64,000 nucleotides of DNA from Macrostomum lignano (lineage: Eukaryota). Shown in pieces: positions 24,047-63,500 of the stretch. The notes under the pieces are model-generated. The model ran no database searches and was not told the origin of the DNA. It saw only the letters and a program-made list of their open reading frames with translations. Made by a program: the position numbers and the translations under genes. Where the stretch lies: positions 62,001 to 126,000 of the forward strand of contig NIVC01000051.1 of assembly GCA_002269645.1 (NCBI GenBank), given 5' to 3'. The stretch's first letter is position 1; each line of letters starts with the position of its first letter.

Positions 24047-27000
24047 TTACTCAAATCCTTGTTTAACACTGCCAGATGACTCATCTTGCTGTTGACGCTG
24101 AACTGTAGGAGAACGATTAATCGTTGATGAAGTAGAAGATGCTGCAACAGTAGCAACAGTAGCCCCAGTAGTCCCGGATTTGGCAATATTAGATCCATCA
24201 TTTTGAGCACTATTGGACACAGGTCGAACAGCTGCGTTAGGAAGTTCCGTAGCTACTGCCGTATTACTATTAGTAGTATCAACAGTAGTAGCAGTAGTAT
24301 TAGTAGCAGTTACAGCTAAGCTAGGCTCCTGCTTTTCCACTTTAATAGTAATCTGACTGGCTGAGTTAGTAGCGCCGTCAGTAGTAGATGCAGATGCGGT
24401 CGGTTTTGATGAAGCCTGAGCGTCAGATTCAGCGGAGACTGGAGGAGCAACGGCCGCAGGCGGTGGCGGCGGAGGCGGCGGTGGTGGCGACACAGGCGGT
24501 CGAATAGGGAATGGCGACTTTTTGAATTGCAACTGATGAGACAGAAGATCAACGCGCTGGTGGAGGGCGCAGTCCAATACAAATGACTCGCTTTGGACAG
24601 CTGAATGGGGGTTTAGACAGGGGGGTGGGGGTTGGGGTTAAATCAGTTTATTTATGCATTCTGCTGACCAATAGGCGCACATACATTTTCATAGTATGTA
24701 CACTGGCCACCCGTTGACAATGTACACCTCACTCCTCTGTGCCTTAGCGCTGTAACATGGGTTACTTAAAGACAGAATTATCCTATCTGTCTGTCTTACC
24801 TCTGTTTTACCTGTCTACTTGATTTAGTGTCTGTCTGTCAGTTTTACCTGTCTGTCTTTGTCTTGCCTGTCTATCTGTCTTACCTGTCTTAGTGTCGATC
24901 TGTCTTTTTGTCTAGCTGTCTGTCTGTCTGTGTGTTTTCTGTCTGTTTCTGCTTTGTCTATTTGATATTAAATCACTTTCAAAGTCTATATCTAGCTGTA
25001 TCCGTATCTTTCCCAATATTTTCTATTAAAATTTTGCTATTAGAAAAGTTTATTTCGATACATATCGTCAAAACTAATAAATGAGTAACAAAGCTCACCT
25101 AAGCGTCCGTGTTTACCACGCAGCAGATAGTGAACGCAGTGACAATCTTCCTCAGTGCCAACAAACAGATGCTTGGGCGCCAGCTCGCTATGGCACTGAT
25201 CAGCTGGCGGCAGGCGTTCAATAATATGCCCGCCGTTGACATTAATCAGCTTCCTAATTAGGTCATCTCGTACAGCTCCGCCGCAGCCGCCGCAGGTTGG
25301 GCCTAGACAGAAGGTATAACCGGAAAATAGCTTATTCTGCCGGCTGGACTCTAGCACCGAGGCCAGACTGATGCCCAGCTGCCGCTCGCCATCTGTATCG
25401 GACAGTGCAAACGATTCGGGTTGCAGCCAAGCCTCTGCACTGGCCGATTCGTTCAACCAATCGGTATTAACAATTGGCACACCGCTAGATACTGCTAATA
25501 GTAGTTTAGGCGTGACAGCTAACGATGGCGTCACTAATATTTGACACTTCTCCGATTCTGTATCTTTCAACAGACGGCCGCCTAGCTTGGCGCACAGTTG
25601 GGCGCATTGAGTTCGATCTTCTTTTGTTAGACCGGAGACGGCTACTAGCAGGGGCTCGTCTGTTGGCCGCTGCCACACTGGTCGAGTGGCAGCCGCGGCG
25701 GCGGAACTGTTGGCCGGGTCGCGGTTGACGGCGCCAGCGAGTTCGAGTCTAATAAAAACGTTTATGTGCCGATATGTATCGAAAGTACACATAAACCCCC
25801 AAAAAATTGTTTCCAGAAGGAATACTAAATCATGCAAGACACGTATAATAGTTTATGTACCTATATCATACCTGCATTAATACTAAGTAGACGTAACCTA
25901 GCCGATATGTATAGAAAAACAAGTTTACTAATAGTTAATAAAATTTCTAAATCTGCTATTGCCTCACCGATATGTATCGAAAGAAACATTTACTACATAA
26001 CGATACTATTAAAAGTACGTGAAAGGAAAAAATAGCATTAGCTATAAATCCATCAATTTAAGACACAAAAATCCGATATGTATAGAAAAAGAGGTTGACC
26101 AATAGGTTTTTTATTCATTGTTATAATAACGACATGTATCGAAAGTACACTTTACTGTACTTACTTGATTCTCTTAACGGAACCAGTCGAATCAGCCTGC
26201 GCCTCCTCTAATTTGCGCTTCTTATCGCCACTGTTCATTAATTTACGATTCTCCACAGCAGCCTAAAGGGGTTCGAGAAGATATGAAGATTTAGATACTA
26301 CACACTATGGTAGATACTATGGTAGACAAATAAATAAGCTAGTACTATACCTGCAGCATCTCAACAGTGACATGAACAGGTGTTGTCCAAGGTGCTAAAA
26401 AAGGTAGTTATAAAAATTACAAAACTTTGCAAATTAACATATGAAAAAATATTAACTGACAGAGAACCACGAGATAATCACTAACCCATCAGAGCTTCGG
26501 ATTCGCCTTTAGCCAGCATTAATTCGTTATTTTTATTTGCGTCCCACCGGCTGTATTTATCGGACACTGGTTTTGCTAGGATAGCAAAACTGCCACGATA
26601 TAGATCCATGACAAATTTGGCATTCACCACCTGTACACGAAAAAAGAAAAATTATGTAATTGCGTAATTTTTCATAGACTGCCTTAAAATTTAATGACGG
26701 TATTTTTGACTGCCTACTTTTAACAAAATATACGAGTAGTATCATTAGCATTTTTGAATAAAAGAATCGATAAATTTTTTTTGAAAACAGCTTACAGCAA
26801 TGCCAAGACCACGAGCCTTATGAACAACATCTGTGTCGCCTTTTTTGCAGACAAGCACAGAAACGGTGGCGCACAATACAGGTGAATAACGAGCGCCTAA
26901 GCTTTTGATCATGTAGTACAGCTTGAGGCGATCGTCCACAGCGAAGCCGTGAATAGCGAATACCTGAATAAAGATAATTGGCAGGCGCACTAGTATTAAC

Positions 27001-40991: not shown

Positions 40992-51694
<10,703 letters not shown>

Positions 51695-52244
51695 ATGGGC
51701 GCTAGTAAACTGCCATTTATTATTTAATTTACAATCACTTACACAATTCGTCAGCTCTCATAGCTTTATGTTTGTAATAGAAAAAAATCCAAAAAAAAAT
51801 ATAATGCCATTCCGACAGCAGAATTTCAACTGGCCCTTTTTCAGTGTGTGTTTTTCATGTCTAAATTTTCTAATAAAAAATGAAAACATTACTAGTGTGT
51901 AAGTTTTTAATACATCATGCTCGCTATAGCAAATTGCTAAAATTGACTGTTTTTAAAACCCCTTTTTTCTTATCTTTTTCATGTTCGTGTTCTTCGTTCT
52001 TTTTCTCAACGCTTAAACCTACTTATGAGTAGTATGTCTTGTTTGCTGTGCATCTAACCATCTAGCGAGTAAATAAAAAACGGTGCAGTTTTGAATTAAA
52101 CCGCCAACTCTGTGGCCTGCTGGCTCGAGCCAATGTGGTATTTTGATTAAAAACTTTTTTTGTTTTGTGTTATTTTCTTTTATCTTTTTTTAGCTAGGAC
52201 TTAGAATGTGTTTGAACTGGCCCCCTTTTCCATGGGTTTAGAAT

Positions 52245-52682
52245 CTGGATTTCCAGCGGTTAATCTGGAATTCCAGGGGTTAATCCGGAATTCCAGGGGT
52301 TAATCTGGAATTCCAGGGTTTAATCTGAATCCCCAGGGGTTAATGTGGATTCCCAGGGTTTAATGTTGATTCCCAGGGGTTAATCTGGATTCCCAAGGGT
52401 TTACAATGTGGATTCCCAGGAGTTTATAATGTGGATTCCCAGGGGTTTACAATGTGGATTCCCAGGGGTTTACAATGTGGATTCCCAGGGGTTTACAATG
52501 TGGATTCCCAGGGGTTTACAATGTGGATTCCCAGGGGTTTACAATGTGGATTCCCAGGGGTTTACAATGTGGATTCCCAGGGGTTTACAATGTGGATTCC
52601 CAGGGGTTTACAATGTGGATTCCCAGGGGTTTACAATGTGGATTCCCAGGGGTTTACAATGTGGATTCCCAGGGGTTTACAA
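52245..52682. repeat. 23-bp minisatellite GTGGATTCCCAGGGGTTTACAAT
   Basis: Homogeneous on the right, degenerate on the left. Confidence 0.93.
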
Positions 52683-52972
52683 TTAGAAACGCTCCGCCTC
52701 TCTGCTGTATGGTTAAGGCAGGCCAATTCTCGCCGCTAGCCTGCTTTTTTCCTCCCTTTTTTCTCCGCTGCTGCATGCTTCTCATTTAAGCCGGTCTGGT
52801 TGGAGTAGAGCTCACGGATAAGTGGCGATATAAGCTTGCTTGCAAGACTTTCTTAGCCCCCCAGTAGGTAAAGTTGCCATATACTCGTATGTACTCGTCG
52901 TATTTTATATAGCTGGTATTCCTATAAATTTAAACTGATAAACCTCCCTATATCTGCTTTTTTGGTTTCTCC

Positions 52973-53007
<35 letters not shown>

Positions 53008-53100
53008 ATTCCTTATTTCTTTCTTGAGATTCTGTTCCATAAGAACGGTTAAGCTGACTCAAGGAGTTCTCATATCATAAACTTATCTGGAGAGAGGATT

Positions 53101-53300
53101 AGGGAGTTGTAAGCCTAGTGGCTAGACCCTCTAGAGCATCGGACTCACCACTAAAAGGCCGGAAGTTCGATTCTTGACCCACTTGAAACAAATTGTATCC
53201 TTGAGCAAGACACTTAACTCTGCATTGGTTCAATTCACCCAGCTGTAAAATGGGTGCCAGCATTAGCTGGGGTAACTGAGGGTGGGAGTGGCGACCCCCC
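53101..53300 (+). mobile_element. Second copy of the tRNA-derived SINE
   Basis: AAGCCTAGTGG...AGTTCGATT...GTATCCTTGAGCAAGACACTTAACTCTGCATTGG...CAGCTGTAAAATGGG...CATTAGCTGGGGTAA. Confidence 0.7.
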
Positions 53301-53573
53301 CCCCTTAGCCCTTGGACTGAACAGCAACTGTCTATGGCCAACGGTGGCAGAATCTGTTATTAAAGCGTGCATTAAACTTTGGCAAAAGTAAGCGAATTTT
53401 GGCAACACGCTTAATTTCCTGTAATTCATACTTCACTTAAAATCTCTATAGTTTATAATTCGTGAAATTTTTGGGATTTTTACATTTTTTAAGAAGACTT
53501 TTGCAACCTCTGTGGGCCAGAGAGGCTCACTATAGCATTTCCCGGTCAATTTGGTCCTAGAAGCACTCAATTT

Positions 53574-54399
53574 AATCCGCAATAGAGAATTCCAATTCAT
53601 TCCGCCGTCACTAGAGATATGTCTATGGCCAAATATGCTGTTTCGTTCCACTTAATTTAATCCTGGAGGCACTTATTTCGCGTATTTATTTTAAAAGCTC
53701 TTACTTTTGAAGAAAAGAGATTGACGCATTGATTTGTAAGCATTAAGTTGTTCGTCCATTAAGACGTAGAACTGCTGCTGGTGCTGTACATCATTGCGAA
53801 CACTAACGTTCGCGACCAATCGATCGATGCAGCCCTGAAACTTTTGAGCAGTCATTGTCTCGGCAATAATCTCATGGTGCAGTAGGCCAAGATGCGGGGA
53901 TATAGCTTGAAAAATGTTCACTTGGACACCGCGTTGTGTATGAACAACTCGGCGCACTCGTTGACCCCGTTTGCTGCGGCCTTGACCACGTCGCGTCCAC
54001 AGATTAAAACCTGTTTCGTCGACGTAAATCAAATGGCAATCAGCTGGCAGACCTAGCAGCCATTCGGCATGCTCACGCCTCCTTGCAATGTTTTCGGGGC
54101 TGTTCCTGGCTGCTGGCACATCTGCATCCCTTACCAAGCACTTCATCGTAAACAATTGCTTGTCGAGCTTGCGAGCGATCGTACTTTTGCTAACTTCGAT
54201 TCCACGAGATTGTTGAAGCTCATGTTGCATTTGACTGCACTACTTTCCGAGTCACTCATTCTTGCTTATTAACGGCTTTTAAAATAAATACGCGAAATAA
54301 GTGCCCCCAGGATTAAATTGAGTGGAACGAAACAGCATATTTGGCCATAGACATATCTCTAATGACGGCGGAATGAATTGGAATTCTCTATTGCGGATT
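53574..54399 (-). mobile_element. IS630/Tc1/mariner-type transposase fragment between ~125-bp inverted repeats
   Basis: ORF 54230-53691 contains VSKSTIARKL (HTH end), LIYVDETGFNLWTRRGQGRSKRG (first Asp) and YVLMD (second Asp); no third catalytic residue. The inverted repeats at 53574-53699 and 54275-54399 are nearly identical. Confidence 0.75.
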
Positions 54400-54617
54400 T
54401 TTATTTTACGAGTTATTTTGAAAGTTTTCACTGATGCCAGTTGGCAACCTGAATTCGGATTCAGGATGCCAAATATAGAATTAATTTGGCAAGAGTTACA
54501 AGCGTATAGTCTATGGATCCAGTTGGGATCGAATTTGGAACTTAAATGCAGAGTCATAGATAAATAAAACGATTCATTTCTATGTATATGATAGCTTCAT
54601 TAGTGATACATCTATTC

Positions 54618-54725
54618 CAGGGGTTGGCAAACTCTGGCCGTCCCGCTGCTCAAGGTTTATGTCTCTTCTCTCCTCTCTATAATATTCTTTCAATTGACTC
54701 CTGTTCGACACTTCTACCCCCTCAT
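54618..54725 (+). mobile_element. Short copy of the same MITE family
   Basis: Starts CAGGGGTTGGCAAACTC. CAAGGTTTATGTCTCTTCTC is identical to the 28770 copy. The right end is degenerate. Confidence 0.5.
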
Positions 54726-55599
54726 CTCTAGGGTATGCTACTTAACGAAAGACAAACATCTGTCAACTTTATTTGTCAAACACCATATTGTGTTTAAGCT
54801 CCCGGGTACAGGAGCTTTAGCCCTTGAAACTAGGCTAAAACTAAGTTTTTCACAGCACATATTAAGATTCTTAACAGCATCTTCCGCATTGGATTAATTT
54901 TAAAATTTAAAAGCAACTTCTGAGCTTAGAAATGTCAGAAACATTATCCAAGAGGTCGAAATAAGTACATGTCGTTAAGTCAGTTGAACTTCATTGGTTA
55001 ATATTAGACTTGCGCCTGTTTGGCTCACAGTTTCTAGAGATACAGAGGATTGTGATTAGTTTCTCTTTAGTAGCTAATAGTGTTGGAGTTAGAAGGACTA
55101 CTTGACTGATCAAAACGACAGGAATGAGAGTAGGGCCAGGGAGGTCTCTGCGAAGGGAAGCGTGGTGCGGAGATGTGGTATATGGGGATAGAGCAGAAGG
55201 AACTGTACATCAGTTTCGCCATCCTCTTCTTCCTTTTTCCCTGTATGTGGAAAGAAAAAATATCTCTTCCTTGCTCCTTCCCGCTGTACGCCGGTGTGGT
55301 ACGAGCTCAAGTCGCGGAAGTGGGATCTGGAATGGGGGGGGGGGTTGGCGTGAATGCTAGTGTGTGCGTGTGCATCTAACTCGACGTTATTAAATACCCA
55401 GTCTGTCATTAGGAGAGCGCGTCCACTGCTGGTAAATAATTCACAATTTCGGTCATTGACTCCCGAGTCTAACAGTCTTGCAATTTGTTCATCAAAAAAA
55501 CACATAGTAAGAATAATTAAAAAAATATCTGGCCATGTCTCTGACCATCTAACTGACTATAGAGAGTCTGGCTTTAAGAGTACTCCTGGCACTTCTCCA

Positions 55600-56205
55600 A
55601 GAGTATCTTTATGGCATCTGAAGACTATCTTTATGGCATTTGAATTAGAGTATATTCTGGCATCTGGAGAGCATCTGAAGAGTATCTTTATGGCATCTGA
55701 ATTAGACTATATTCTGGCATCTGAAGAATATCCTCCGGCACTCATCCAAGAGTATCATCTGGCACTCACCCAAGAGTATCATCGGGCACTTATCCAAGAG
55801 TATCATCTGGCACTCATCCAAGAGTATCATCTGGCACTCATCCAAGAGTATCATCTGGCACTCATCCAAGAGTATCATCTGGCACTCATCCAAGAGTATC
55901 ATCTGGCACTCATCCAAGATTATCATCTGGCACTCACCCAAGAGTATCATCTGGCACTCATCCAAGAGTATCATCTGGCACTCACCCAAGAGTATCATCT
56001 GGCACTCATCCAATAGTATCATCTGGCACTCATCCAAGTGTATCATCTGTCACTCATCCAATAGTATCTGGCACTCATCCAAGAGTATATCATCTGGCAC
56101 TCACCCAAGAGTATCATCTGGCACTCATCCAATAGTATCATCTGGCACTCATCCAATAGTATCTTCTGGCACTCATCCAAGTGTATCATCTGGCACTCAT
56201 CCTGT
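55600..56205. repeat. 24-bp minisatellite CTGGCACTCATCCAAGAGTATCAT upstream of the hemerythrin-like exon
   Basis: About 20 clean units. Confidence 0.93.
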
Positions 56206-56350
56206 CTCAAGTGTATCTCTAACTCCTTTAAAGAGTACCCAAAACTAGCCTAGGGACAGCTTAGACACAGAATCAGTCCTGGAACTTTCAGACTCAAAAT
56301 ATTCAGCCATCTAGCAATGTTACTAAACTTATATAAACTGTCAATTACAG

Positions 56351-57702
56351 GGTGCCCAACAGAGCTACACTCTTGCCGACGTACGCCAGCGCGCCGAAGC
56401 TGGCGGAGCCGGCAACAACAACAAATCGTCGAACGAAGCCGACGAAACACGCGACGCCGCTATTCAAGGCGTCCGGCTGGGCCTGCCGGCTGGCAACAGC
56501 AGCCGTCAAGTTGTTGAAGCCAACATTGAGAGCATGTCCCGAGAGAAACTAGTCGAACATCTCGTCCAGCTGGGTGTACCTCCGGCCGCTGAAGTGTCTG
56601 ACGCTGATCTGGCCGCTATGCTGAAGTTGGCCGTTCGCAGCGACTTCTGGCGCGGTGTCTGGCAGCAGCATCCCAATAAGGGCCTGCTGCGCATGTGGAT
56701 GTACGCTCACGATGGATTTAGAAAGCGGCTGACCGCCCTGCGCCAGACTGTTGCCGGCGATGCCGACTTGACTGCCGCTCAGGTGGGGCATAGATTTATT
56801 AGATTGCTTTGCCTTTTAGAAGAGAGTCCTTATCCCATTTGAGGATCCCCTCTAGTACCATTTCCAAGAATTCCCTCTGATACCGTTCCCAGGAATTCCC
56901 TGTGATACCGTTTCCAAGAATTCCCTCTGATACCGTTCCCAGGAATTCCCTGTGATACCGTTTCCAAGAATTCCCTCTGATACCGTTTCCAAGAGTTCCC
57001 TCTGATACCGTTTCCAAAAATTCTCTCTGATACCGTTCCCAAGAACTCCCTCTGATACTGTTTCCAAGAATTCACTCTGATACCGTTTCCAAGAGTTCAC
57101 TCTGATACCGTTTCTTCTAATAATTCCCTCGATACCTTTTAAGAATCGCCCCTGTTACCCTTTCCAATAGCCGCCCTAGTATCATTTCTAAGAATCCTCT
57201 CATTTTTATTACTCTTTTTTTTAAAATCGCAAACTTATTGAAAAAAGTCTTTTTGTCTACTGAAAGTAGGATAATAAATTTTTTTCTCATTTAATTTTTT
57301 GTTCAACAGGTCGCCGACGTGGACAGTCATTTGCAGGGATTTCTAAAAAAGAACGCTCCCCATTCGGAGTTTGAAGACACTCAACTGTTCCCCTACTTCA
57401 AAGAGGCCTATCCTCAGTTCGCTCAGTTCTGGCAGGAGATCGACAATCAGCATGGCAAGTTCAACGAAGTAGTGAAGAAAGCCACTGAGGCGATCGCTGC
57501 CGGCGCTTCCGGTGGCGCCAACGGCGACGCTAGAAAATCTCTGGCCGGCGCTGTTAACGGGCTGGCTGATTTCTATGAAGATCACCTGCTGCTTGAGGAG
57601 CGACTCATGGTGCCGCTTTGGCTCAATGTCACGGATGCTCAGAAGGCCGAATTGCGTAGCCGTCTGCGCGGAATGTATTGGCTGTCGTCATATTCATTCT
57701 GA
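56351..57702 (+). CDS. Hemerythrin-like (HHE cation-binding domain) protein
   Basis: Exons 56351-56782 (first in-frame ATG at 56534) and 57310-57702, phase-0 GT-AG intron. Spaced metal-ligand motifs AHDGFRKRL, HSEFEDTQLFP, EIDNQH and DHLLLEERLMVP are typical of hemerythrin-like four-helix bundles. The N-terminus is uncertain. Confidence 0.75.
56855..57200. repeat. 25-bp minisatellite TTTCCAAGAATTCCCTCTGATACCG in the hemerythrin-like intron
   Basis: About 11 units plus a degenerate tail. Confidence 0.9.
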
Positions 57703-58825
57703 TTTCTTGGGGTAGAGCGATGAGATTAGTTTTATCGTTAGAAGTTTTAGTAGTTTTATTACACTTTTCATTTAGCTACTTGAAGTAGTCAATAAAGAAA
57801 GGTTTGAATTTTAATCCAATCGATTTATAAACTTTGATCTGATCGATTTAACTTTGAGTTTAAAGGATTTGATTTAATGTTCAGATGACTTAGAGTAATA
57901 TGGAAGTTATAATTTGCTACTTCTAATAGCTTTTGTCAGAGAGAGGTATTTGACAGGAAAACAATTTTATCTATTGTTAATCTGTCTAAATGTTAGCAAT
58001 TCTAATGCTCTATTCGTAATCGTTAATCTTTAGCATACGTTATTTGTTATCGAATTGTTTTGATTGTATCAACAGCATATTTATATAGCTATGCTTTTTG
58101 TATGTCGTTCAATTGATGAGTAATTATAAATTTACAAACATATTATTCTTGGCCAGTCATTCTATTGTCGTAATCTGCGAATATTTATTATTTTTGTTAT
58201 ATTTGCATATTTTCTCTGTTAAAATACATGTACTCCTGATATAAGCTTGACAGCTGTTAATAGATTTGAGGTTAATAGTAAACATTTTTATCGTATGGTC
58301 TTTTCGTTGTGTGCTTTTGTTGGTTTATTACTTTTTGATTAAAATTAAAACAAAATTATCTTGTATTGTTTGTTCATTAAAGTCCGTTCTAAATATCATC
58401 CTTAAAAAGTTGCTTTTTCAAGTTTTTATATATTGTCTCAAAAAGAGTGTGTACTTTAAAAGTACATGTTATCAGTTTGTACTTTAAAAGTACACGTGCT
58501 CTCGGTGTGCACTTCAAACATACATGTACTTTATCTTTGTTCTACTATAATTACAATTGCATTATATTTTTATTTTTTTGTTCGGTGTCTTTAGATAGTA
58601 GCTAAAAAAATCTTAAAACTTTGAATTATGTGCAACAAAATAAAAAGCGCAATTTAATTTTTTGCTGCTCTTTGTTCTAGTTTGTGTGTGTGCGTTTGTT
58701 TGTGTTTGTTGTTTCGTTGCATTATTTAACTACAAAATCTTACTGGCGTTTTTTTCTCGAGCTATAATTTTGTAGCAGGTTCTCTGTTGCTTTCAGGGAG
58801 AGTTGGCCAGCAGGTGCCTTTTGGG

Positions 58826-60085
58826 CAGTAGATAGAGATGCAGGTCAGTAGAGATAGAGATGCAGGTCAGTAGAGATAGAGATGCAGGTCAGTAGAGATA
58901 GAGATGCAGGTCAGTAGGGATAGAGATGCAGGTCAGTAGAGATAGAGATGCAGGTCAGTAGAGATAGAGAGGCAGGTCAGAAGAGATAGAGATGCAGGTC
59001 AGAAGAGATAGAGATGCAGGTCAGTAGAGATAGAGATGCAGGTCAGTAGAGATAGAGATGCAGGTCAGTAGAGATAGAGAGGCAGGTCAGAAGAGATAGA
59101 GATGCAGGTCAGTAGAGATAGAGGCGCAGGTCAGTAGAGAGAAAGGCGCAGGTCAGTAGAGATAGAGGCGCAGGTCAGTAGAGAGAAAGGCGCAGGTCAG
59201 TAGAGATAGAGGCGCAGGTCAGTAGAGATAGAGGCGCAGGTCAGTAGAGAGAAAGGCGCAGGTCAGTAGAGATAGAGGCGCAGGTCAGTAGAGAGAAAGG
59301 CGCAGGTCAGTAGAGATAGAGGCGCAGGTCAGTAGAGATAGAGGCGCAGGTCAGTAGAGAGAAAGGCGCAGGTCAGTAGAGATAGAGGCGCAGGTCAGTA
59401 GAGAGAAAGGCGCAGGTCAGTAGAGATAGAGGCGCAGGTCAGTAGAGATAGAGGCGCAGGTCAGTAGAGATAGAGGCGCAGGTCAGTAGAGAGAAAGGCG
59501 CAGGTCAGTAGAGATAGAGGCGCAGGTCAGTAGAGATAGAGGCGCAGGTCAGTAGAGAGAAAGGCGCAGGTCAGTAGAGATAGAGGCGCAGGTCAGTAGA
59601 GAGAAAGGCGCAGGTCAGTAGAGACAGAGATGCAGGTCAGTAGAGACAGAGATGCAGGTCAGTAGAGATAGAGGCGCAGGTCAGTAGAGATAGAGGCGCA
59701 GGTCAGTAGAGAGAAAGGCGCAGGTCAGTAGAGATAGAGGCGCAGGTCAGTAGAGAGAAAGTCGCAGGTCAGTAGAGAGAAAGGCGCAGGTCAGTAGAGA
59801 TAGAGGCGCAGGTCAGTAGAGATAGAGGCGCAGGTCAGTAGAGATAGAGGCGCAGGTCAGTAGAGAGAAAGGCGCAGGTCAGTAGAGATAGAGGCGCAGG
59901 TCAGTAGAGAGAAAGGCGCAGGTCAGTAGAGACAGAGATGCAGGTCAGTAGAGAGAGAGGCGCAGGTCAGTAGAGATAGAGATTCAGGTCAGAATAGATA
60001 GAAATGCAGGTCAGAAGAGATAGAGATGCAGGTCAGTAGAGACAGAGGCGCAGGTCAGTAGAGATAAAGATTCAGGTCGGTAGAT
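58826..60085. repeat. 22-bp minisatellite CAGGTCAGTAGAGATAGAGGCG
   Basis: About 57 units with alternating variants. Confidence 0.96.
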
Positions 60086-60512
60086 ATGGAATTAGAAGTA
60101 AGAAGTCTAGCAAAAAGATTAGCACGAACTATAGCTAGGTGCTGCGAGCTGCCTATGCTATCGTATGCAAAGGTCTCGATGCAGTCTGCATACGTTGTCT
60201 ATACGTTTTCTCTATCGCAGGGTAGATTGTGCTCGGTCCGATATATGCTGTATACACAATAGTTTTGTTTGTACAAGGCTTACGAGAGCACACAAAGCAG
60301 CTATCTCTGTCTTATTTAACTACTTGGCCTCATACTATATGCTTCGTTTTTACACAGTAAAGCACCTGGATATCTGTCCAGCTAGTTGCTATGTCAGATA
60401 GTAAAAAGGCATACGCTAATATGAATCACCTTTTGTTGATCAGTCTTGACAGTGCATTTTCGATCGGTCGTTTCATTTCAGCTACAATACGAGGCAAAAA
60501 AAGCAGGCAACA

Positions 60513-63500
60513 ATGGCATCATCTGTGGTGCATTCCCGAGCTTACCTGCTCATTGAACAGGAATTGCTAAAATTTGAACGTAATCCTGTTAAGGTAAGTC
60601 TATTGAATCAGTACTTTGGAAATCTACCGGGAATCGCCATCTAACCTCATTAGGAATCGCCCTCTAACCTCATTAGGAATCGCCCTCTAACCTCATTAGG
60701 AATCGCCCTCTAACCTCATTAGGAATCGCCCTCTAACCTCATTGGGAATCGCCCTCTAACCTCATTGGGAATCGCCCTCTAACCTCATTAGGAATCGCCC
60801 TCTAACCTCATTAGGAATCGCCCTCTAACCTCATTAGGAATCGCCCTCTAACCTTATTGGGAATCGCCCTCTAACCTCATTAGGAATCGCCCTCTAACCT
60901 CATTGGGAATCGCCCTCTAACCTCATTGGGAATCGGCCTCTAACCTCATTGGGAATCGCCCTCTAACCTCATTGGGAATCGCCCTCTAACCTCATTGGGA
61001 ATCGCCCTCTAACCTCATTAGGAATCGCCCTCTAACCTCATTAGGAATCGCCCTCTAACCTTATTGGGAATCGCCCTCTAACCTCATTAGGAATCGCCCT
61101 CTAACCTCATTGGGAATCGCCCTCTAACCTCATTGGGAATCGGCCTCTAACCTCATTGGGAATCGCCCTCTAACCTCATTGGGAATCGCCCTCTAACCTC
61201 ATTGGGAATCGCCCTCTAACCTCATTAGGAATCGCCCTCTAACCTCATTGGGAATCGCCCTCTAACCTCATTGGGAATCGGCCTCTAACCTCATTAGGAA
61301 TCGCCCTCTAACCTCATTGGGAATCGCCCTCTAACCTCATTGGGAATCGGCCTCTAACCTCATTGGGAATCGGCCTCTAACCTCATTGGGAATCGCCCTC
61401 TAACCTCATTGGGAATCGCCCTCTAACCTCATTGGGAATCGCCCTCTAACCTCATTGGGAATCGCCCTCTAACCTCATTAGGAATCGCCCTCTAACCTCA
61501 TTGGGAATCGCCCTCTAACCTCATTGGGAATCGGCCTCTAACCTCATTAGGAATCGCCCTCTAACCTCATTAGGAATCGCCCTCTAACCTCATTGGGAAT
61601 CGCCCTCTAACCTCATTGGGAATCGCCCTCTAACCTCATTGGGAATCGCCCTCTAACCTCATTGGGAATCGCCCTCTAACCTCATTAGGAATCGCCCTCT
61701 AACCTCATTGGGAATCGCCCTCTAACCTCATTAGGAATCGCTCTCTAACCTCATTGGGAATCGCCCTCTAACCTCATTGGGAATCGCCCTCTAACCTCAT
61801 TGGGAATCGCCCTCTAACCTCATTGGGAATCGCCCTCTAACCTCATTGGGAATCGGCCCAATCCTTCAAAATTCAGGGCATCCGAGTCTATCCAACCAGG
61901 GCCGGCAATCTATTTTCACTGTCGGCAAAGATCAAAGGCCTACCAGATACTCTGTGGGACGGTGGCGTATTGAAGCTCAGACTAAGATTCTCCGAGAGCT
62001 ACAATTATGTGCCACCTGAGGCTAATTTTGTGACTGTGCCATTTCATCCTAATGGTAAGAGATGTTTTTATTATTTATTAATATAGTGCTAAGATGTCCT
62101 CTAGGTCAAACAAAGATTATTTTTAAACTACTTAGTGAGTAGGGTGTATTAGGGTAATGTAATGGGTAATGACCTGAGGTTAGTTCAGTCAAAAATGTAT
62201 TTTATTCCCAAAACAATACTCGTTTAGTTTAATTGCGAGCTATTATTGATCTTTGTGTAGTTTTTCAAGAGCTCTGTTAAAAAATACCTGCAACATTAAT
62301 TTTTATAGTACTAACAGTAGTCCTACGACTTGTGCGTTGATTATAAAAGTAATTTGTTTAAAAAGGATTCGGGACCCCAAATCCCGGGATTTCGGGATCC
62401 CGGGATCCCGAGATTGCAATCCCTAGTACCAATCTACATTTTCGCTTTGCCATTCGCAGTTGAACCGGACACTGGTCGTGTTGCATGTCCTTATCTGGAC
62501 GATCCGCAGAAATGGAACGCGTCAGTTTCTTTAGCCGATTTATTGAGCAGCATTCAACAGCAGCTAACTGAGCCAAATGCTCAGCTAATATTGAATCCCG
62601 AGGCTGCCGAAATGATGAGCACTGATTATGAGCAATATAAAAGCGTAGTTGCTCAGTGCGTACAAATGAGCCAAATTGTTGAAAGTGAGTTCGCGTCTTG
62701 TATTTTGTTTTTTTAGGTTAGTGTTAGTTAATTATTGTCATTTTCAGCTACATTATCATGTTTTAATTTTAATAAAGAATCACATTTATTGTCTTTTTAG
62801 CTACAGAAGTCGCCATTTCTCCACCAAATCCGCCCGCAAAGCCTTTGCGAGCTGGCATCGTAGTTTCTATGTGTAATTTTTTCAGTGAAATAGAAAATTA
62901 TTTTTGTTTGTTTGTTGAATGTGCCAGTATTTTAGCTAATTTAACGATGTTGAATACAAGCCAAATTAGCACAATATTTAAAGTCCCGCATACATACATT
63001 GAGACCGAGATAAAATGAAAAGCTGGTTGGTAATATTAAGGTCGCGTTAACTTTGCTTGAACCCATTCGCACTTTCGCGATAAGATAAATATAGTTAGGG
63101 TAGAGGAAGGATTGGTTGACGGCCCAACCAGATCGATAAAACAGTCACCCACCCCCATCTAGCCAGCAGCGATTAAGTGAAGTTGGCGGGGTAGGAAAGA
63201 GGTTTAAGGCCGATAATAAAATCGATAAAAAAACACCCACCCACCCCCTGTGACTGTACATGACCAGCAGCGATAGATATAAGTTGACGGGAGGTTAGGA
63301 AACTCGGGTTGGTGGACTACCAGCTAATCGATAATAAACTCACCCACCCCATTCCATCCGGGCCTATGGGACTATGGCGCTTAGGGGGCCAGAGTGTACA
63401 TTTGTCTATGGGGCTTTGTGGGCAGAGTGTACATTTGTCTATAGGGCTTGAAGGTAGAGTGTACATTTGTATATGGGGCTTGGCAGGGGCAGGGCAAGAG

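What the first reader, a model, noticed from the sequence alone, without database searches (positions are those of the whole stretch)
56341..56536. Hemerythrin-like gene may take its start codon from a spliced leader, creating MGAQQS
Seen: right after the acceptor TCAATTACAG (56350) a phase-0, coding-like, stop-free frame runs 61 codons (GAQQSYTLADVRQRAEAGG...) into the ATG at 56534. Adding one Met gives M-G-A-Q-Q-S, an exact MGxxxS N-myristoylation consensus, yet I found no upstream exon ending in ATG followed by GT. Established: flatworm spliced leaders end in AUG that can act as the initiator. Inference: trans-splicing would supply both the start codon and a lipid-anchor signal. An alternative is a cis exon at 55354-55506 (MLVCAC...KKHI then gtaaga), also in phase, which would give a different N-terminus; the two could be switchable targeting isoforms.
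Basis: partly seen in the sequence, partly recalled or inferred. Interest (0 to 1): 0.72.

Follow-up and report, generated by a model that had tools for sequence, protein, structure and literature searches.

The report
Spliced-leader start codon completes lipid-anchor signal
In the flatworm Macrostomum lignano, a hemerythrin-like gene has no start codon of its own and most likely borrows the AUG at the end of the trans-spliced leader, giving an N-terminus (MGAQQS) that matches the lipid-anchor signal its algal and protist relatives encode directly. This is a neat but not new use of a known flatworm mechanism.

Summary
The window is Macrostomum lignano scaffold NIVC01000051.1. The gene is the two-exon hemerythrin-domain gene Mlig016643.g1 (exons 56351-56782 and 57310-57702).

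The published M. lignano spliced leader ends in ATG, and TTACAG|G at 56345-56351 fits its trans-splice acceptor motif. An in-frame TAA lies 8 codons upstream, with no ATG between it and the acceptor.

- **Coding:** the 61 codons before the first genomic ATG score like true coding sequence in this frame only (shuffle z = 4.9).
- **Family signal:** fifteen of the 29 closest complete homologues start MG and fit the PROSITE myristoylation pattern. A profile of their N-termini matches the flatworm extension (13 of 3000 shuffles reach the score).
- **Local precedent:** RuvBL2, in the same window, also starts directly after an acceptor and cannot otherwise encode its conserved N-terminus.

No RNA reads could be examined, so trans-splicing at this site, translation from the leader AUG and lipidation are all inferred. 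The mechanism is already known in flatworms (Cheng et al. 2006), so this is a new member of a known kind. Public protein records lack the Met.

The parts
56324..56326 (+). In-frame TAA stop, 8 codons upstream of the acceptor. No ATG lies between it and 56351, so read-through of unspliced RNA cannot supply a start.
   Evidence: Translation of 56201-56782; sequence.
56341..56350 (+). 3' splice acceptor TCAATTACAG. TTACAG (56345-56350) matches the M. lignano trans-splice acceptor motif [T/C]TNCAG. It is the proposed site where the 35-nt SL (...TTATTGCATG) is joined.
   Evidence: Sequence. Motif and SL sequence from PMC8629364. The site is identical in the second genomic copy L001. The GenBank CDSs of the two copies are flagged partial and begin 3 and 6 nt downstream.
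56351..56368 (+). Codons GAQQSY. With the SL AUG they give MGAQQSY, which matches the N-myristoylation consensus (Gly2, Ala3, Ser6, no Pro at 7).
   Evidence: The homologue N-termini carry the same motif.
56351..56533 (+). 61-codon N-terminal extension with no ATG in any frame. It is coding-like in frame 0 only.
   Evidence: Codon model. N-terminal family profile scores 7.9 bits, reached by 13 of 3000 shuffles. AF2 predicts helices at residues 9-18, 30-43 and 53-62. Divergence between the two copies is 0.5% with no indels.
56534..56536 (+). First genomic in-frame ATG (Met63 of the full protein), in the context gagagcATGt with A at -3. It is a possible secondary start by leaky scanning and would give a non-lipidated 213-aa form.
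   Evidence: This Met is not conserved in homologues.
56351..56782 (+). Exon 1 of the hemerythrin-like gene (Mlig016643.g1); the donor is CAG|GTGGGG.
   Evidence: The two-exon model is 100% identical over its full length to UniRef A0A1I8HXK9.
56783..57309 (+). Intron, containing a 25-bp tandem repeat array (56848-57167).
57310..57702 (+). Exon 2, including the TGA stop at 57700-57702. Together with the end of exon 1 it carries the hemerythrin HHE domain (Pfam match residues 114-248).
   Evidence: Pfam PF01814 at E = 4.4e-13. The metal-ligand-type positions H121, H163, E167, H193, H237 and E241 are invariant.
55354..55506 (+). Judged not to be a coding exon.
   Evidence: Codon score is -4.6 to -4.8 in all frames and GC is 41%. 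Divergence between the copies is 7.9%, like neutral flank. No Pfam hit.

Best explanation
The gene is a two-exon hemerythrin-like (di-iron four-helix-bundle) gene of Macrostomum lignano whose coding sequence begins at the first base after a trans-splice acceptor (56350|56351). It has no start codon of its own. The 35-nt spliced leader, which ends in AUG, is joined there. The mature mRNA then reads ...UUGC-AUG-GGU-GCC-CAA-CAG-AGC..., and translation from the SL AUG yields a 275-aa protein starting MGAQQSYTLADV. After removal of Met1, Gly2 would be N-myristoylated, as inferred for most members of this eukaryotic family, tethering the iron-binding domain to a membrane or partner. Shown here: the organism, the gene model, the acceptor motif, the lack of a genomic start, the coding nature of the extension, family conservation of the MG start, and a parallel case (RuvBL2) in the window. 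Inferred: trans-splicing at this exact site, initiation at the SL AUG, and lipidation. Because the SL AUG has a weak -3 base (U) and the next AUG in any frame is the in-frame Met63 with A at -3, some leaky scanning to a shorter non-lipidated form is possible. This last point is speculative.
For: Identity: the two-exon protein is 100% identical to M. lignano hemerythrin-domain proteins, and the locus is NIVC01000051.1. SL and motif: SL = CGGTCTCTTACTGCGAAGACTCAATTTATTGCATG; 30-39% of genes are trans-spliced; the acceptor motif is [T/C]TNCAG, and the site reads TTACAG|G. No genomic start: TAA lies at 56324-6, there is no ATG before 56351 in frame, and no ATG in any frame from 56351 to 56533. Coding extension: frame 0 scores -3.92 per codon against -3.97 for control CDS and about -4.5 off-frame, z = 4.9. 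Family: 15 of 29 closest complete homologues start MG and fit PS00008, 13 as MGxxx[ST]. They come from green and brown algae, a diatom-bearing set, an oomycete and a gregarine. The homologues carry 25-70 residues before the conserved L..L...GV helix, as the flatworm protein does only if it starts at the acceptor. The N-terminal profile hits the extension at 7.9 bits against a shuffle mean of 1.4; 13 of 3000 shuffles reach it. AF2 gives pLDDT 75-88 with helices in most of the extension. Precedent in the same window: the RuvBL2 CDS starts at 46619, directly after cattAG. The TAG is in frame, and residue 9 aligns with human RUVBL2 residue 5. [quoted passage not shown]
Against: No SL-containing read, cDNA or peptide was examined. 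The only junction search possible was uninformative, because that collection does not hold the exon at all. The GenBank partial CDSs begin 3 and 6 nt after the acceptor rather than exactly at it, and this is unexplained. One UniProt model from an older assembly (A0A1I8F7Y1) reads the extension in another frame. That implies a 1-nt indel in that copy, or an assembly error. Conservation between the two genomic copies does not separate coding from other constraint, since the proximal outron is also conserved at 1.3%. Two ATG|GT sites exist upstream, and the second copy has ATG|GTAAGA where the window has ATA|GTAAGA. Myristate alone is a weak anchor, and no nearby Cys or polybasic patch is evident.
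Confidence: 0.72

Rival explanations
1. Translation starts only at the genomic ATG at 56534 (MSREKLVEHL...). The 183 nt after the acceptor would then be 5' UTR, and the MGAQQS reading would be a coincidence.
For: The ATG at 56534 has a good context, with A at -3, while the SL AUG has U at -3. A 213-aa product would keep the whole Pfam hemerythrin match, residues 114-248. One database model has a frame change inside the extension. Frame +1 of the extension is also open.
Against: Frame 0 of the extension has codon usage equal to true CDS, while frames 1 and 2 do not (z = 4.9). Homologues carry 25-70 residues before the point aligned with Met63, and that Met is not conserved. Half of the homologues start MG plus the myristoylation pattern, exactly where the flatworm frame begins. 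The N-terminal profile matches, and AF2 predicts confident helices in the extension.
Confidence: 0.1
2. A cis-spliced upstream exon supplies the start. It could be a short exon ending in ATG (52709 or 53874) or the reader's exon 55354-55506, which would give a different, non-myristoylated N-terminus, possibly as an alternative isoform.
For: ATG|GT sites exist at 52709 and 53874. 55506|55507 has a consensus GTAAG donor in phase with 56351. In the second copy that donor reads ATG|GTAAGA. Sharing of acceptors between cis- and trans-splicing is reported in parasitic flatworms.
Against: The 52709 and 53874 donors (GTTAAG, GTGCAG) lack GT[G/A]AG. About five ATGGT sites are expected by chance in the 5.3 kb scanned (my estimate, 5350/1024), and two were found. 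The 55354-55506 segment has non-coding codon usage in all frames and 41% GC. It shows 12-13 substitutions in about 153 nt between the copies, with roughly 7 non-synonymous to 4 synonymous codon changes, like the neutral flanks at 5-8%, and it has no Pfam hit. The transcript-based GenBank models of both copies are 5'-partial and start next to the acceptor rather than extending upstream. An internal position for GAQQS would abolish the family's conserved N-terminal Gly.
Confidence: 0.07
3. Both forms are made from one SL-capped mRNA. Initiation at the SL AUG gives a myristoylated form, and leaky scanning to Met63 gives a soluble form, so the protein has dual localisation. This extends the best explanation rather than competing with it.
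For: After the SL AUG (context uauugcAUGg) there is no AUG in any frame until the in-frame 56534 AUG, which has A at -3. The chance of zero ATG in 183 nt of this composition is 0.15.
Against: The absence of intervening AUGs is not statistically unusual. Met63 is not conserved in homologues. There are no expression data.
Confidence: 0.2

Closest known systems
SL-AUG-initiated mRNAs of Schistosoma mansoni and other flatworms (Cheng et al. 2006, J Biol Chem 281:733, PMID 16230357); 'slORFs' (slORFfinder, PMC9851317)
   Same: The spliced leader ends in AUG. After trans-splicing, that AUG is in frame with the recipient ORF and supplies the initiator Met for a gene that lacks a suitable one.
   Different: This is a different species and SL, the free-living M. 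lignano, where SL-AUG use is only mentioned in passing in the papers read here. Here the AUG also completes a position-specific lipidation signal conserved in the protein family. A full-text search for spliced leader, myristoylation, trans-splicing and AUG together found no paper. There is no experimental evidence for this gene.
RuvBL2 (TIP49b) gene in the same window, CDS start 46619
   Same: The ORF begins at the first base after an AG acceptor, an in-frame stop lies immediately upstream, and the conserved N-terminus cannot be encoded without a spliced-on Met.
   Different: It gives MAAQ..., an ordinary N-terminus with no lipidation motif. The acceptor there is TTAG rather than YTNCAG.
Eukaryotic (algal and protist) hemerythrin-like proteins ending ...YRSYLSWKYxxMY, such as Tetraselmis striata TSEL_006336, Nemacystus decipiens g10254, Choristocarpus CAM9322900.1 and Selenidium pygospionis
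   Same: They are 22-35% identical across the alignment and hit table. They share the architecture: MG start, variable linker, L..L...GV helix, then an H/HxxxE/H/HxxxE four-helix bundle.
   Different: They encode their own ATG-GGN start. The flatworm protein has a divergent C-terminus (...RGMYWLSSYSF) and is the only named metazoan member found.
YtfE/RIC (repair of iron centres) di-iron proteins, PDB 5fnn and 7bha
   Same: They are the closest solved structures by sequence profile, at E = 8e-8 over the hemerythrin-like domain. The fold search gives only weak four-helix-bundle matches (2p0n, 6q09).
   Different: They are bacterial, cytosolic and lack an N-terminal MG extension. Sequence identity is low, and the function cannot be transferred with confidence.
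N-myristoylated gas-binding proteins such as globin X (recalled from memory, not tested here)
   Same: The analogy is a small O2- or NO-binding metalloprotein tethered to a membrane by an N-terminal MG lipidation signal.
   Different: The fold and cofactor are unrelated (haem rather than di-iron). This is an analogy only.

Membership tests
SL-AUG-initiated (trans-splicing-dependent) ORF of flatworms | The organism has an SL RNA whose leader ends in AUG | tested here: met
   The window is M. lignano. Its SL is CGGTCTCTTACTGCGAAGACTCAATTTATTGCATG (PMC8629364).
SL-AUG-initiated (trans-splicing-dependent) ORF of flatworms | A 3' splice acceptor of trans-splice type lies at the 5' end of the ORF | tested here: met
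   TTACAG|G at 56345-56351 fits [T/C]TNCAG and is conserved in the second copy.
SL-AUG-initiated (trans-splicing-dependent) ORF of flatworms | The SL AUG is in frame with the main ORF, and no genomic in-frame AUG can encode the conserved N-terminus | tested here: met
   In-frame TAA at 56324-6; no ATG until 56534. The family N-terminus aligns with residues 1-62.
SL-AUG-initiated (trans-splicing-dependent) ORF of flatworms | SL-containing transcripts are joined at this acceptor | not testable with these tools
   No M. lignano RNA data were reachable, and the junction and exon searches both returned nothing. Only indirect evidence exists: the transcript-based GenBank CDSs are 5'-partial and start 3 and 6 nt after the acceptor, and the annotation pipeline cuts transcripts at SL-read peaks.
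SL-AUG-initiated (trans-splicing-dependent) ORF of flatworms | No competing cis donor is used upstream | tested here: inconclusive
   Candidate donors at 52709, 53874 and 55507 exist but are weak or flank non-coding-like sequence. Their use cannot be excluded without RNA data.
SL-AUG-initiated (trans-splicing-dependent) ORF of flatworms | Translation actually initiates at the SL AUG | not testable with these tools
   This needs ribosome profiling or N-terminal proteomics.
N-myristoyltransferase substrates | Gly at position 2, with positions 3-7 fitting PROSITE PS00008 and Ser/Thr at position 6 | tested here: met
   M-G-A-Q-Q-S-Y fits, conditional on the SL AUG. I applied the pattern from the PROSITE definition.
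N-myristoyltransferase substrates | The motif is conserved in homologues | tested here: met
   15 of 29 closest complete homologues start MG and fit PS00008; 13 are MGxxx[ST].
N-myristoyltransferase substrates | Covalent myristate on Gly2 | not testable with these tools
   This needs metabolic labelling or mass spectrometry.
Hemerythrin HHE cation-binding domain (PF01814) | Significant match to the family profile | tested here: met
   E = 4.4e-13, 50.2 bits against a cut-off of 25.3, residues 114-248.
Hemerythrin HHE cation-binding domain (PF01814) | His and Glu metal ligands on a four-helix bundle | tested here: met
   H121, H163, E167, H193, H237 and E241 are invariant in 19 sequences. AF2 predicts long helices with pTM 0.83. 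The PDB profile hit is to di-iron YtfE.
Hemerythrin HHE cation-binding domain (PF01814) | Binds a di-iron centre | not testable with these tools
   This needs biochemical work.

The most novel reading that the evidence does not exclude
A hemerythrin-like gene of algal or protist type, possibly acquired horizontally by a diatom-eating flatworm, lost or never had its own ATG and became obligately dependent on the spliced-leader AUG to rebuild the family's N-terminal myristoylation signal. Acceptor choice to the nucleotide would then decide whether the protein is lipid-anchored, and leaky scanning to Met63 would give a second, soluble form. It would be the first described case in which SL trans-splicing is required for a co-translational lipid modification.
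Probability: 0.2. Interest if true: 0.6.

Novelty: new member of a known kind. Interest (0 to 1): 0.38.

Why it matters
The case has some value in four ways.

- **A strict test of SL-AUG function.** N-myristoylation needs Gly at exactly position 2, so here the SL AUG is more than a possible alternative start. It is required, and its position is fixed to the nucleotide. That makes the gene a clean reporter for whether flatworm SL AUGs are functionally used, in the one flatworm with stable transgenesis.
- **An annotation gap.** All five public protein records for this gene lack the Met or start in the outron. RuvBL2 in the same window has the same problem. SL-aware ORF calling would fix many 'partial' M. 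lignano proteins and reveal N-terminal signals that are now missed.
- **An uncharacterised family.** It points to a eukaryotic family of probably membrane-tethered di-iron proteins that has not been studied.
- **Limits.** The mechanism has been established since 2006, so a specialist would find this a nice example rather than a surprise.

Tried and rejected
- **SL RNA gene in the window.** I searched for the SL 3' end (TTTATTGCATG) and scanned Rfam. The SL hits were at chance level and Rfam found no family. The SL gene lies elsewhere in the genome.
- **Direct RNA evidence.** The SL-exon junction was absent from the metagenome contigs, but so was the exon itself, so that negative means nothing. 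The gene identifiers do not occur in the searchable literature or in the held supplements.
- **dN/dS between the two genomic copies.** The copies are too similar, with one substitution in the 183-nt extension. The proximal outron is equally conserved, so this cannot separate coding from other constraint.
- **The open frame as evidence.** Rejected on its own, because frame +1 is also open and 21% of YTNCAG sites are followed by at least 60 open codons.
Rejected.
- **Operon membership with RuvBL2.** The gap is 4.66 kb. About 1.05 kb of it is tandem repeats, and it also holds a DDE transposase fragment. That is still above the published 1-kb repeat-adjusted threshold, so the question stays undecided.
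- **Bacterial promoter and terminator scan.** Irrelevant for a eukaryote.
- **Fold search against the PDB.** No significant match (best E = 0.37), only generic four-helix bundles.
- **Cheng et al. 2006.** The paper itself is not held. I cite its results through PMC9851317 and PMC12582326.
Full report
**What is there.**
- TCAATTACAG ends at 56350.
- From 56351 an open frame, GAQQSYTLADVRQRAEAGG..., runs 61 codons into the ATG at 56534 and on to a donor (CAG|GTGGGG, exon end 56782).
- After a 527-nt intron that holds a 25-bp tandem array, exon 2 (57310-57702) ends in TGA.
- The joined product has a hemerythrin HHE domain (PF01814, E = 4.4e-13, residues 114-248).
- Eight codons upstream of the acceptor there is an in-frame TAA (56324-56326), and no ATG lies between the two.

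**Which organism and gene.** The two-exon protein is 100% identical over its full length to 'Hemerythrin domain-containing protein' of Macrostomum lignano. The cluster holds five records.
- Three UniProt models start LQGAQQS..., LQGAQQS... and a frame-shifted YRVPNRATLL....
- Two GenBank proteins are flagged 'partial': PAA92452.1 (Mlig016643.g1) starts AQQS and PAA71700.1 (Mlig032384.g1) starts QQS.
- None has a start Met.
- The window is scaffold NIVC01000051.1 of assembly GCA_002269645.1, and the GenBank CDS starts at window 56354.
- So the refuting condition 'not a trans-splicing flatworm' is not met.

**Does the organism have the required machinery?** M. lignano has a single 35-nt spliced leader, CGGTCTCTTACTGCGAAGACTCAATTTATTGCATG, so the leader ends in ATG. 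Between 30 and 39% of its genes are trans-spliced. The top motif at trans-splice acceptors is [T/C]TNCAG, placed right at the junction (PMC8629364 and PMC5730564). The site here reads TTACAG|G, an exact fit. [quoted passage not shown] For flatworms in general the SL AUG is an established initiator. In Schistosoma mansoni it is in frame in 28% of trans-spliced transcripts, and more than 40 cDNAs need it (Cheng et al. 2006, as summarised in PMC9851317).

**Is the 61-codon stretch really coding?** Being stop-free is weak evidence here. Frame +1 of the same 183 nt is also open, and 64 of the 302 YTNCAG sites in the window are followed by at least 60 open codons. Codon usage decides the matter.
- I trained a codon table on the undisputed downstream CDS (213 codons).
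- The extension scores -3.92 per codon in frame 0.
- Held-out true CDS scores -3.97.
- Frames 1 and 2 of the extension score -4.52 and -4.64, and off-frame control CDS about -4.5.
- Against 5000 shuffles, frame 0 has z = 4.9 and no shuffle reaches it.
- GC content jumps from 38% in the 150 nt before the acceptor to 62% after it.

An exhaustive HMMER search found 85 relatives. The named ones are algae and protists: Tetraselmis, Bryopsis, the brown algae Nemacystus and Choristocarpus, the diatom Ditylum, the oomycete Saprolegnia and the gregarine Selenidium.
- Of the 29 closest relatives that begin with Met, 15 begin MG and fit the PROSITE N-myristoylation pattern. Thirteen of them are MGxxx[ST], including all four top hits: MGNSES, MGSAAS, MGSGQS and MGNSSS.
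- From general knowledge, only about 1% of eukaryotic proteins carry such a start, so this is a family trait.
- In the alignment the relatives have 25-70 residues between the MG start and a conserved L..L...GV helix. The flatworm Met63 sits just before that helix and is not conserved.
- A profile built only from the first 32 residues of 23 relatives scores the flatworm extension at 7.9 bits. Shuffles that keep the MG average 1.4 bits, and 13 of 3000 reach the observed score. Frames 1 and 2 score about -1. The match is centred on SYTLADV against, for example, SISVADV or VVSVNDV.
- An AlphaFold2 model built with this alignment (mean pLDDT 85.7, pTM 0.83) puts helices at residues 9-18, 30-43 and 53-62. 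Ten-residue block pLDDT means across the extension are 75-88, apart from 53 for residues 21-30.
- Together these results say the protein starts at, or within a residue of, the acceptor, and that the residue after the initiator is the family's conserved Gly.

**A positive control in the same window.** The RuvBL2 (TIP49) gene has its GenBank CDS start at 46619, which is the first base after ...ccttcatTAG|GCAGCC.
- The TAG of the acceptor is in frame.
- The ORF after it reads [39 protein letters not shown].
- Its residue 9 aligns with residue 5 of human RUVBL2 (E about 1e-26).
- The first genomic in-frame ATG lies about 47 codons in, past the conserved motif.

This essential, highly conserved gene therefore also needs a spliced-on Met (MAAQ...). 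It shows that SL-AUG initiation is in routine use at this locus.

**Alternatives.**

(a) *Start at 56534 only.* This is disfavoured by the coding signal and by the homology of the extension. However, the SL AUG has U at -3, while 56534 has A at -3. No other AUG in any frame lies between them (chance of none = 0.15). A minor, non-lipidated isoform by leaky scanning is therefore plausible but untested.

(b) *A cis exon.* ATG|GT occurs twice upstream, at 52709 and 53874. Both lack the GT[G/A]AG donor motif.
- It has non-coding codon usage in every frame (-4.6 to -4.8) and 41% GC.
- It has no Pfam hit.
- It carries 12-13 substitutions in about 153 nt between the two genomic copies (7.9%, about 7 non-synonymous to 4 synonymous). 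That is like the flanks (5-8%) and unlike the exons (0.5-2.4%, no indels).
- Placing GAQQS internally would destroy the conserved N-terminal Gly.

One oddity is that the second copy reads ATG|GTAAGA at this donor, where the window has ATA. I treat this as coincidence, but RNA data should check it.

**What could not be shown.** No M. lignano RNA reads or transcript contigs were reachable. The transcript-based GenBank models are 5'-partial and start next to the acceptor, and the annotation pipeline cuts transcripts at SL-read peaks. This is indirect support. The starts are 3 and 6 nt downstream of the AG rather than exactly at it, as in RuvBL2, and I cannot explain that offset. One UniProt model implies a 1-nt indel within the extension in another copy, or in the older PacBio assembly. 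Trans-splicing at this site, initiation at the SL AUG and myristoylation are therefore inferences.

**Function.** The domain keeps the H/HxxxE/H/HxxxE-type positions (H121, H163, E167, H193, H237 and E241 are invariant). Its nearest solved relatives by sequence are the di-iron YtfE/RIC proteins (E = 8e-8). The fold search gave only weak four-helix-bundle matches. The most likely picture is a small di-iron protein that senses or handles O2, NO or iron and is held at a membrane or partner by an N-terminal myristate. The biochemical role is unknown.

**Verdict.** I give about 0.7-0.8 to the SL AUG being the start and somewhat less to actual lipidation. The cis-exon and isoform idea is not supported. 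The mechanism is already known in flatworms, so this is a new member of a known kind. It has two mildly novel sides. First, the SL AUG completes a position-critical lipidation signal, and I found no paper linking the two. Second, the gene belongs to an otherwise algal and protist family.

Noticed in passing
window 46600-46840 (+), acceptor at 46618|46619: RuvBL2/TIP49 starts at the first base after cattAG. The TAG is in frame, and the [13 protein letters not shown]...[24 protein letters not shown] aligns from residue 9 to human RUVBL2 residue 5. The first genomic in-frame ATG is about 47 codons in. This is a second and cleaner case of a start codon that must be spliced on (MAAQ...).
   Followed up: yes
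window 60495-60530 (+): In the ubiquitin-conjugating-enzyme gene, a YNCAG-like acceptor aaagCAG|GCAACAATGGCATCA lies at 60506|60507. An SL AUG would be in frame three codons upstream of the genomic ATG at 60513, giving M-A-T-M-ASSVVH. The collection places the CDS start at 60516, just after the ATG, and I cannot explain that.
   Followed up: partly
whole gene 56351-57702; homologues P0006-P0035: All named relatives of this hemerythrin-like protein are algae or protists (Tetraselmis, Bryopsis, Nemacystus, Choristocarpus, Ditylum, Saprolegnia, Selenidium), at 22-35% identity. No named metazoan was found. The flatworm gene has an intron with host-type tandem repeats and sits between RuvBL2 and a UBC gene in two copies, so it is not contamination. 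Either a patchy ancient family or horizontal acquisition is possible.
   Followed up: partly
L001 7745-7753 (equivalent to window 55504-55512): The second genomic copy reads ATG|GTAAGA where the window reads ATA|GTAAGA. In that copy, a cis splice from this donor to the acceptor would also place an ATG directly before GGT. It is probably a coincidence of a neutral A-to-G change.
   Followed up: partly
window 56410-56425 and 56478-56486; protein P0005 (UniProt A0A1I8F7Y1): A third database model reads the extension in frame +1 and returns to frame 0 at LPAGNSS. It also has one extra AAC unit (NNN becomes NNNN). This implies a 1-nt C insertion in a GGGCC run in another copy, or in the older assembly. 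It is either an assembly error or a disabled copy.
   Followed up: no
window 56354 and L001 10001: The GenBank partial CDSs of the two copies start 3 and 6 nt downstream of the AG acceptor (AQQS..., QQS...). The RuvBL2 CDS starts exactly at its acceptor. The reason for the offset is not clear. It may reflect SL trimming or peak calling in the annotation pipeline.
   Followed up: no
window 51695-56350: The 4.66-kb gap between RuvBL2 and the hemerythrin gene is largely repeats. It holds a 23-bp array of 20 copies (52242-52683), a 24-bp array of 20 copies (55724-56202, ending 150 nt before the acceptor), and a DDE_3 transposase fragment on the minus strand (53691-54230, E = 1e-10). RuvBL2, the hemerythrin gene and the UBC gene are all on the + strand in the window, and a GST gene follows on + just beyond its end (seen in L002). 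The first three have acceptor-adjacent starts, which hints at a repeat-inflated operon.
   Followed up: partly
window 58823-60090 and 60630-61860: Very long tandem arrays with units of about 22 and 23 bp (for example GCAGGTCAGTAGAGATAGAGAT) fill the region between the hemerythrin 3' end and the first intron of the UBC gene. They are also present, with different copy numbers, in the second copy (L001).
   Followed up: no
window 25040-25837 (-) and 44209-45498 (-): Other coding segments turned up while I looked for training exons. One ORF contains a BRCT domain (E = 1e-11). A 429-aa ORF has weak zf-C2H2_12 and DUF4371 hits, typical of a domesticated or decaying hAT-like transposase.
   Followed up: no
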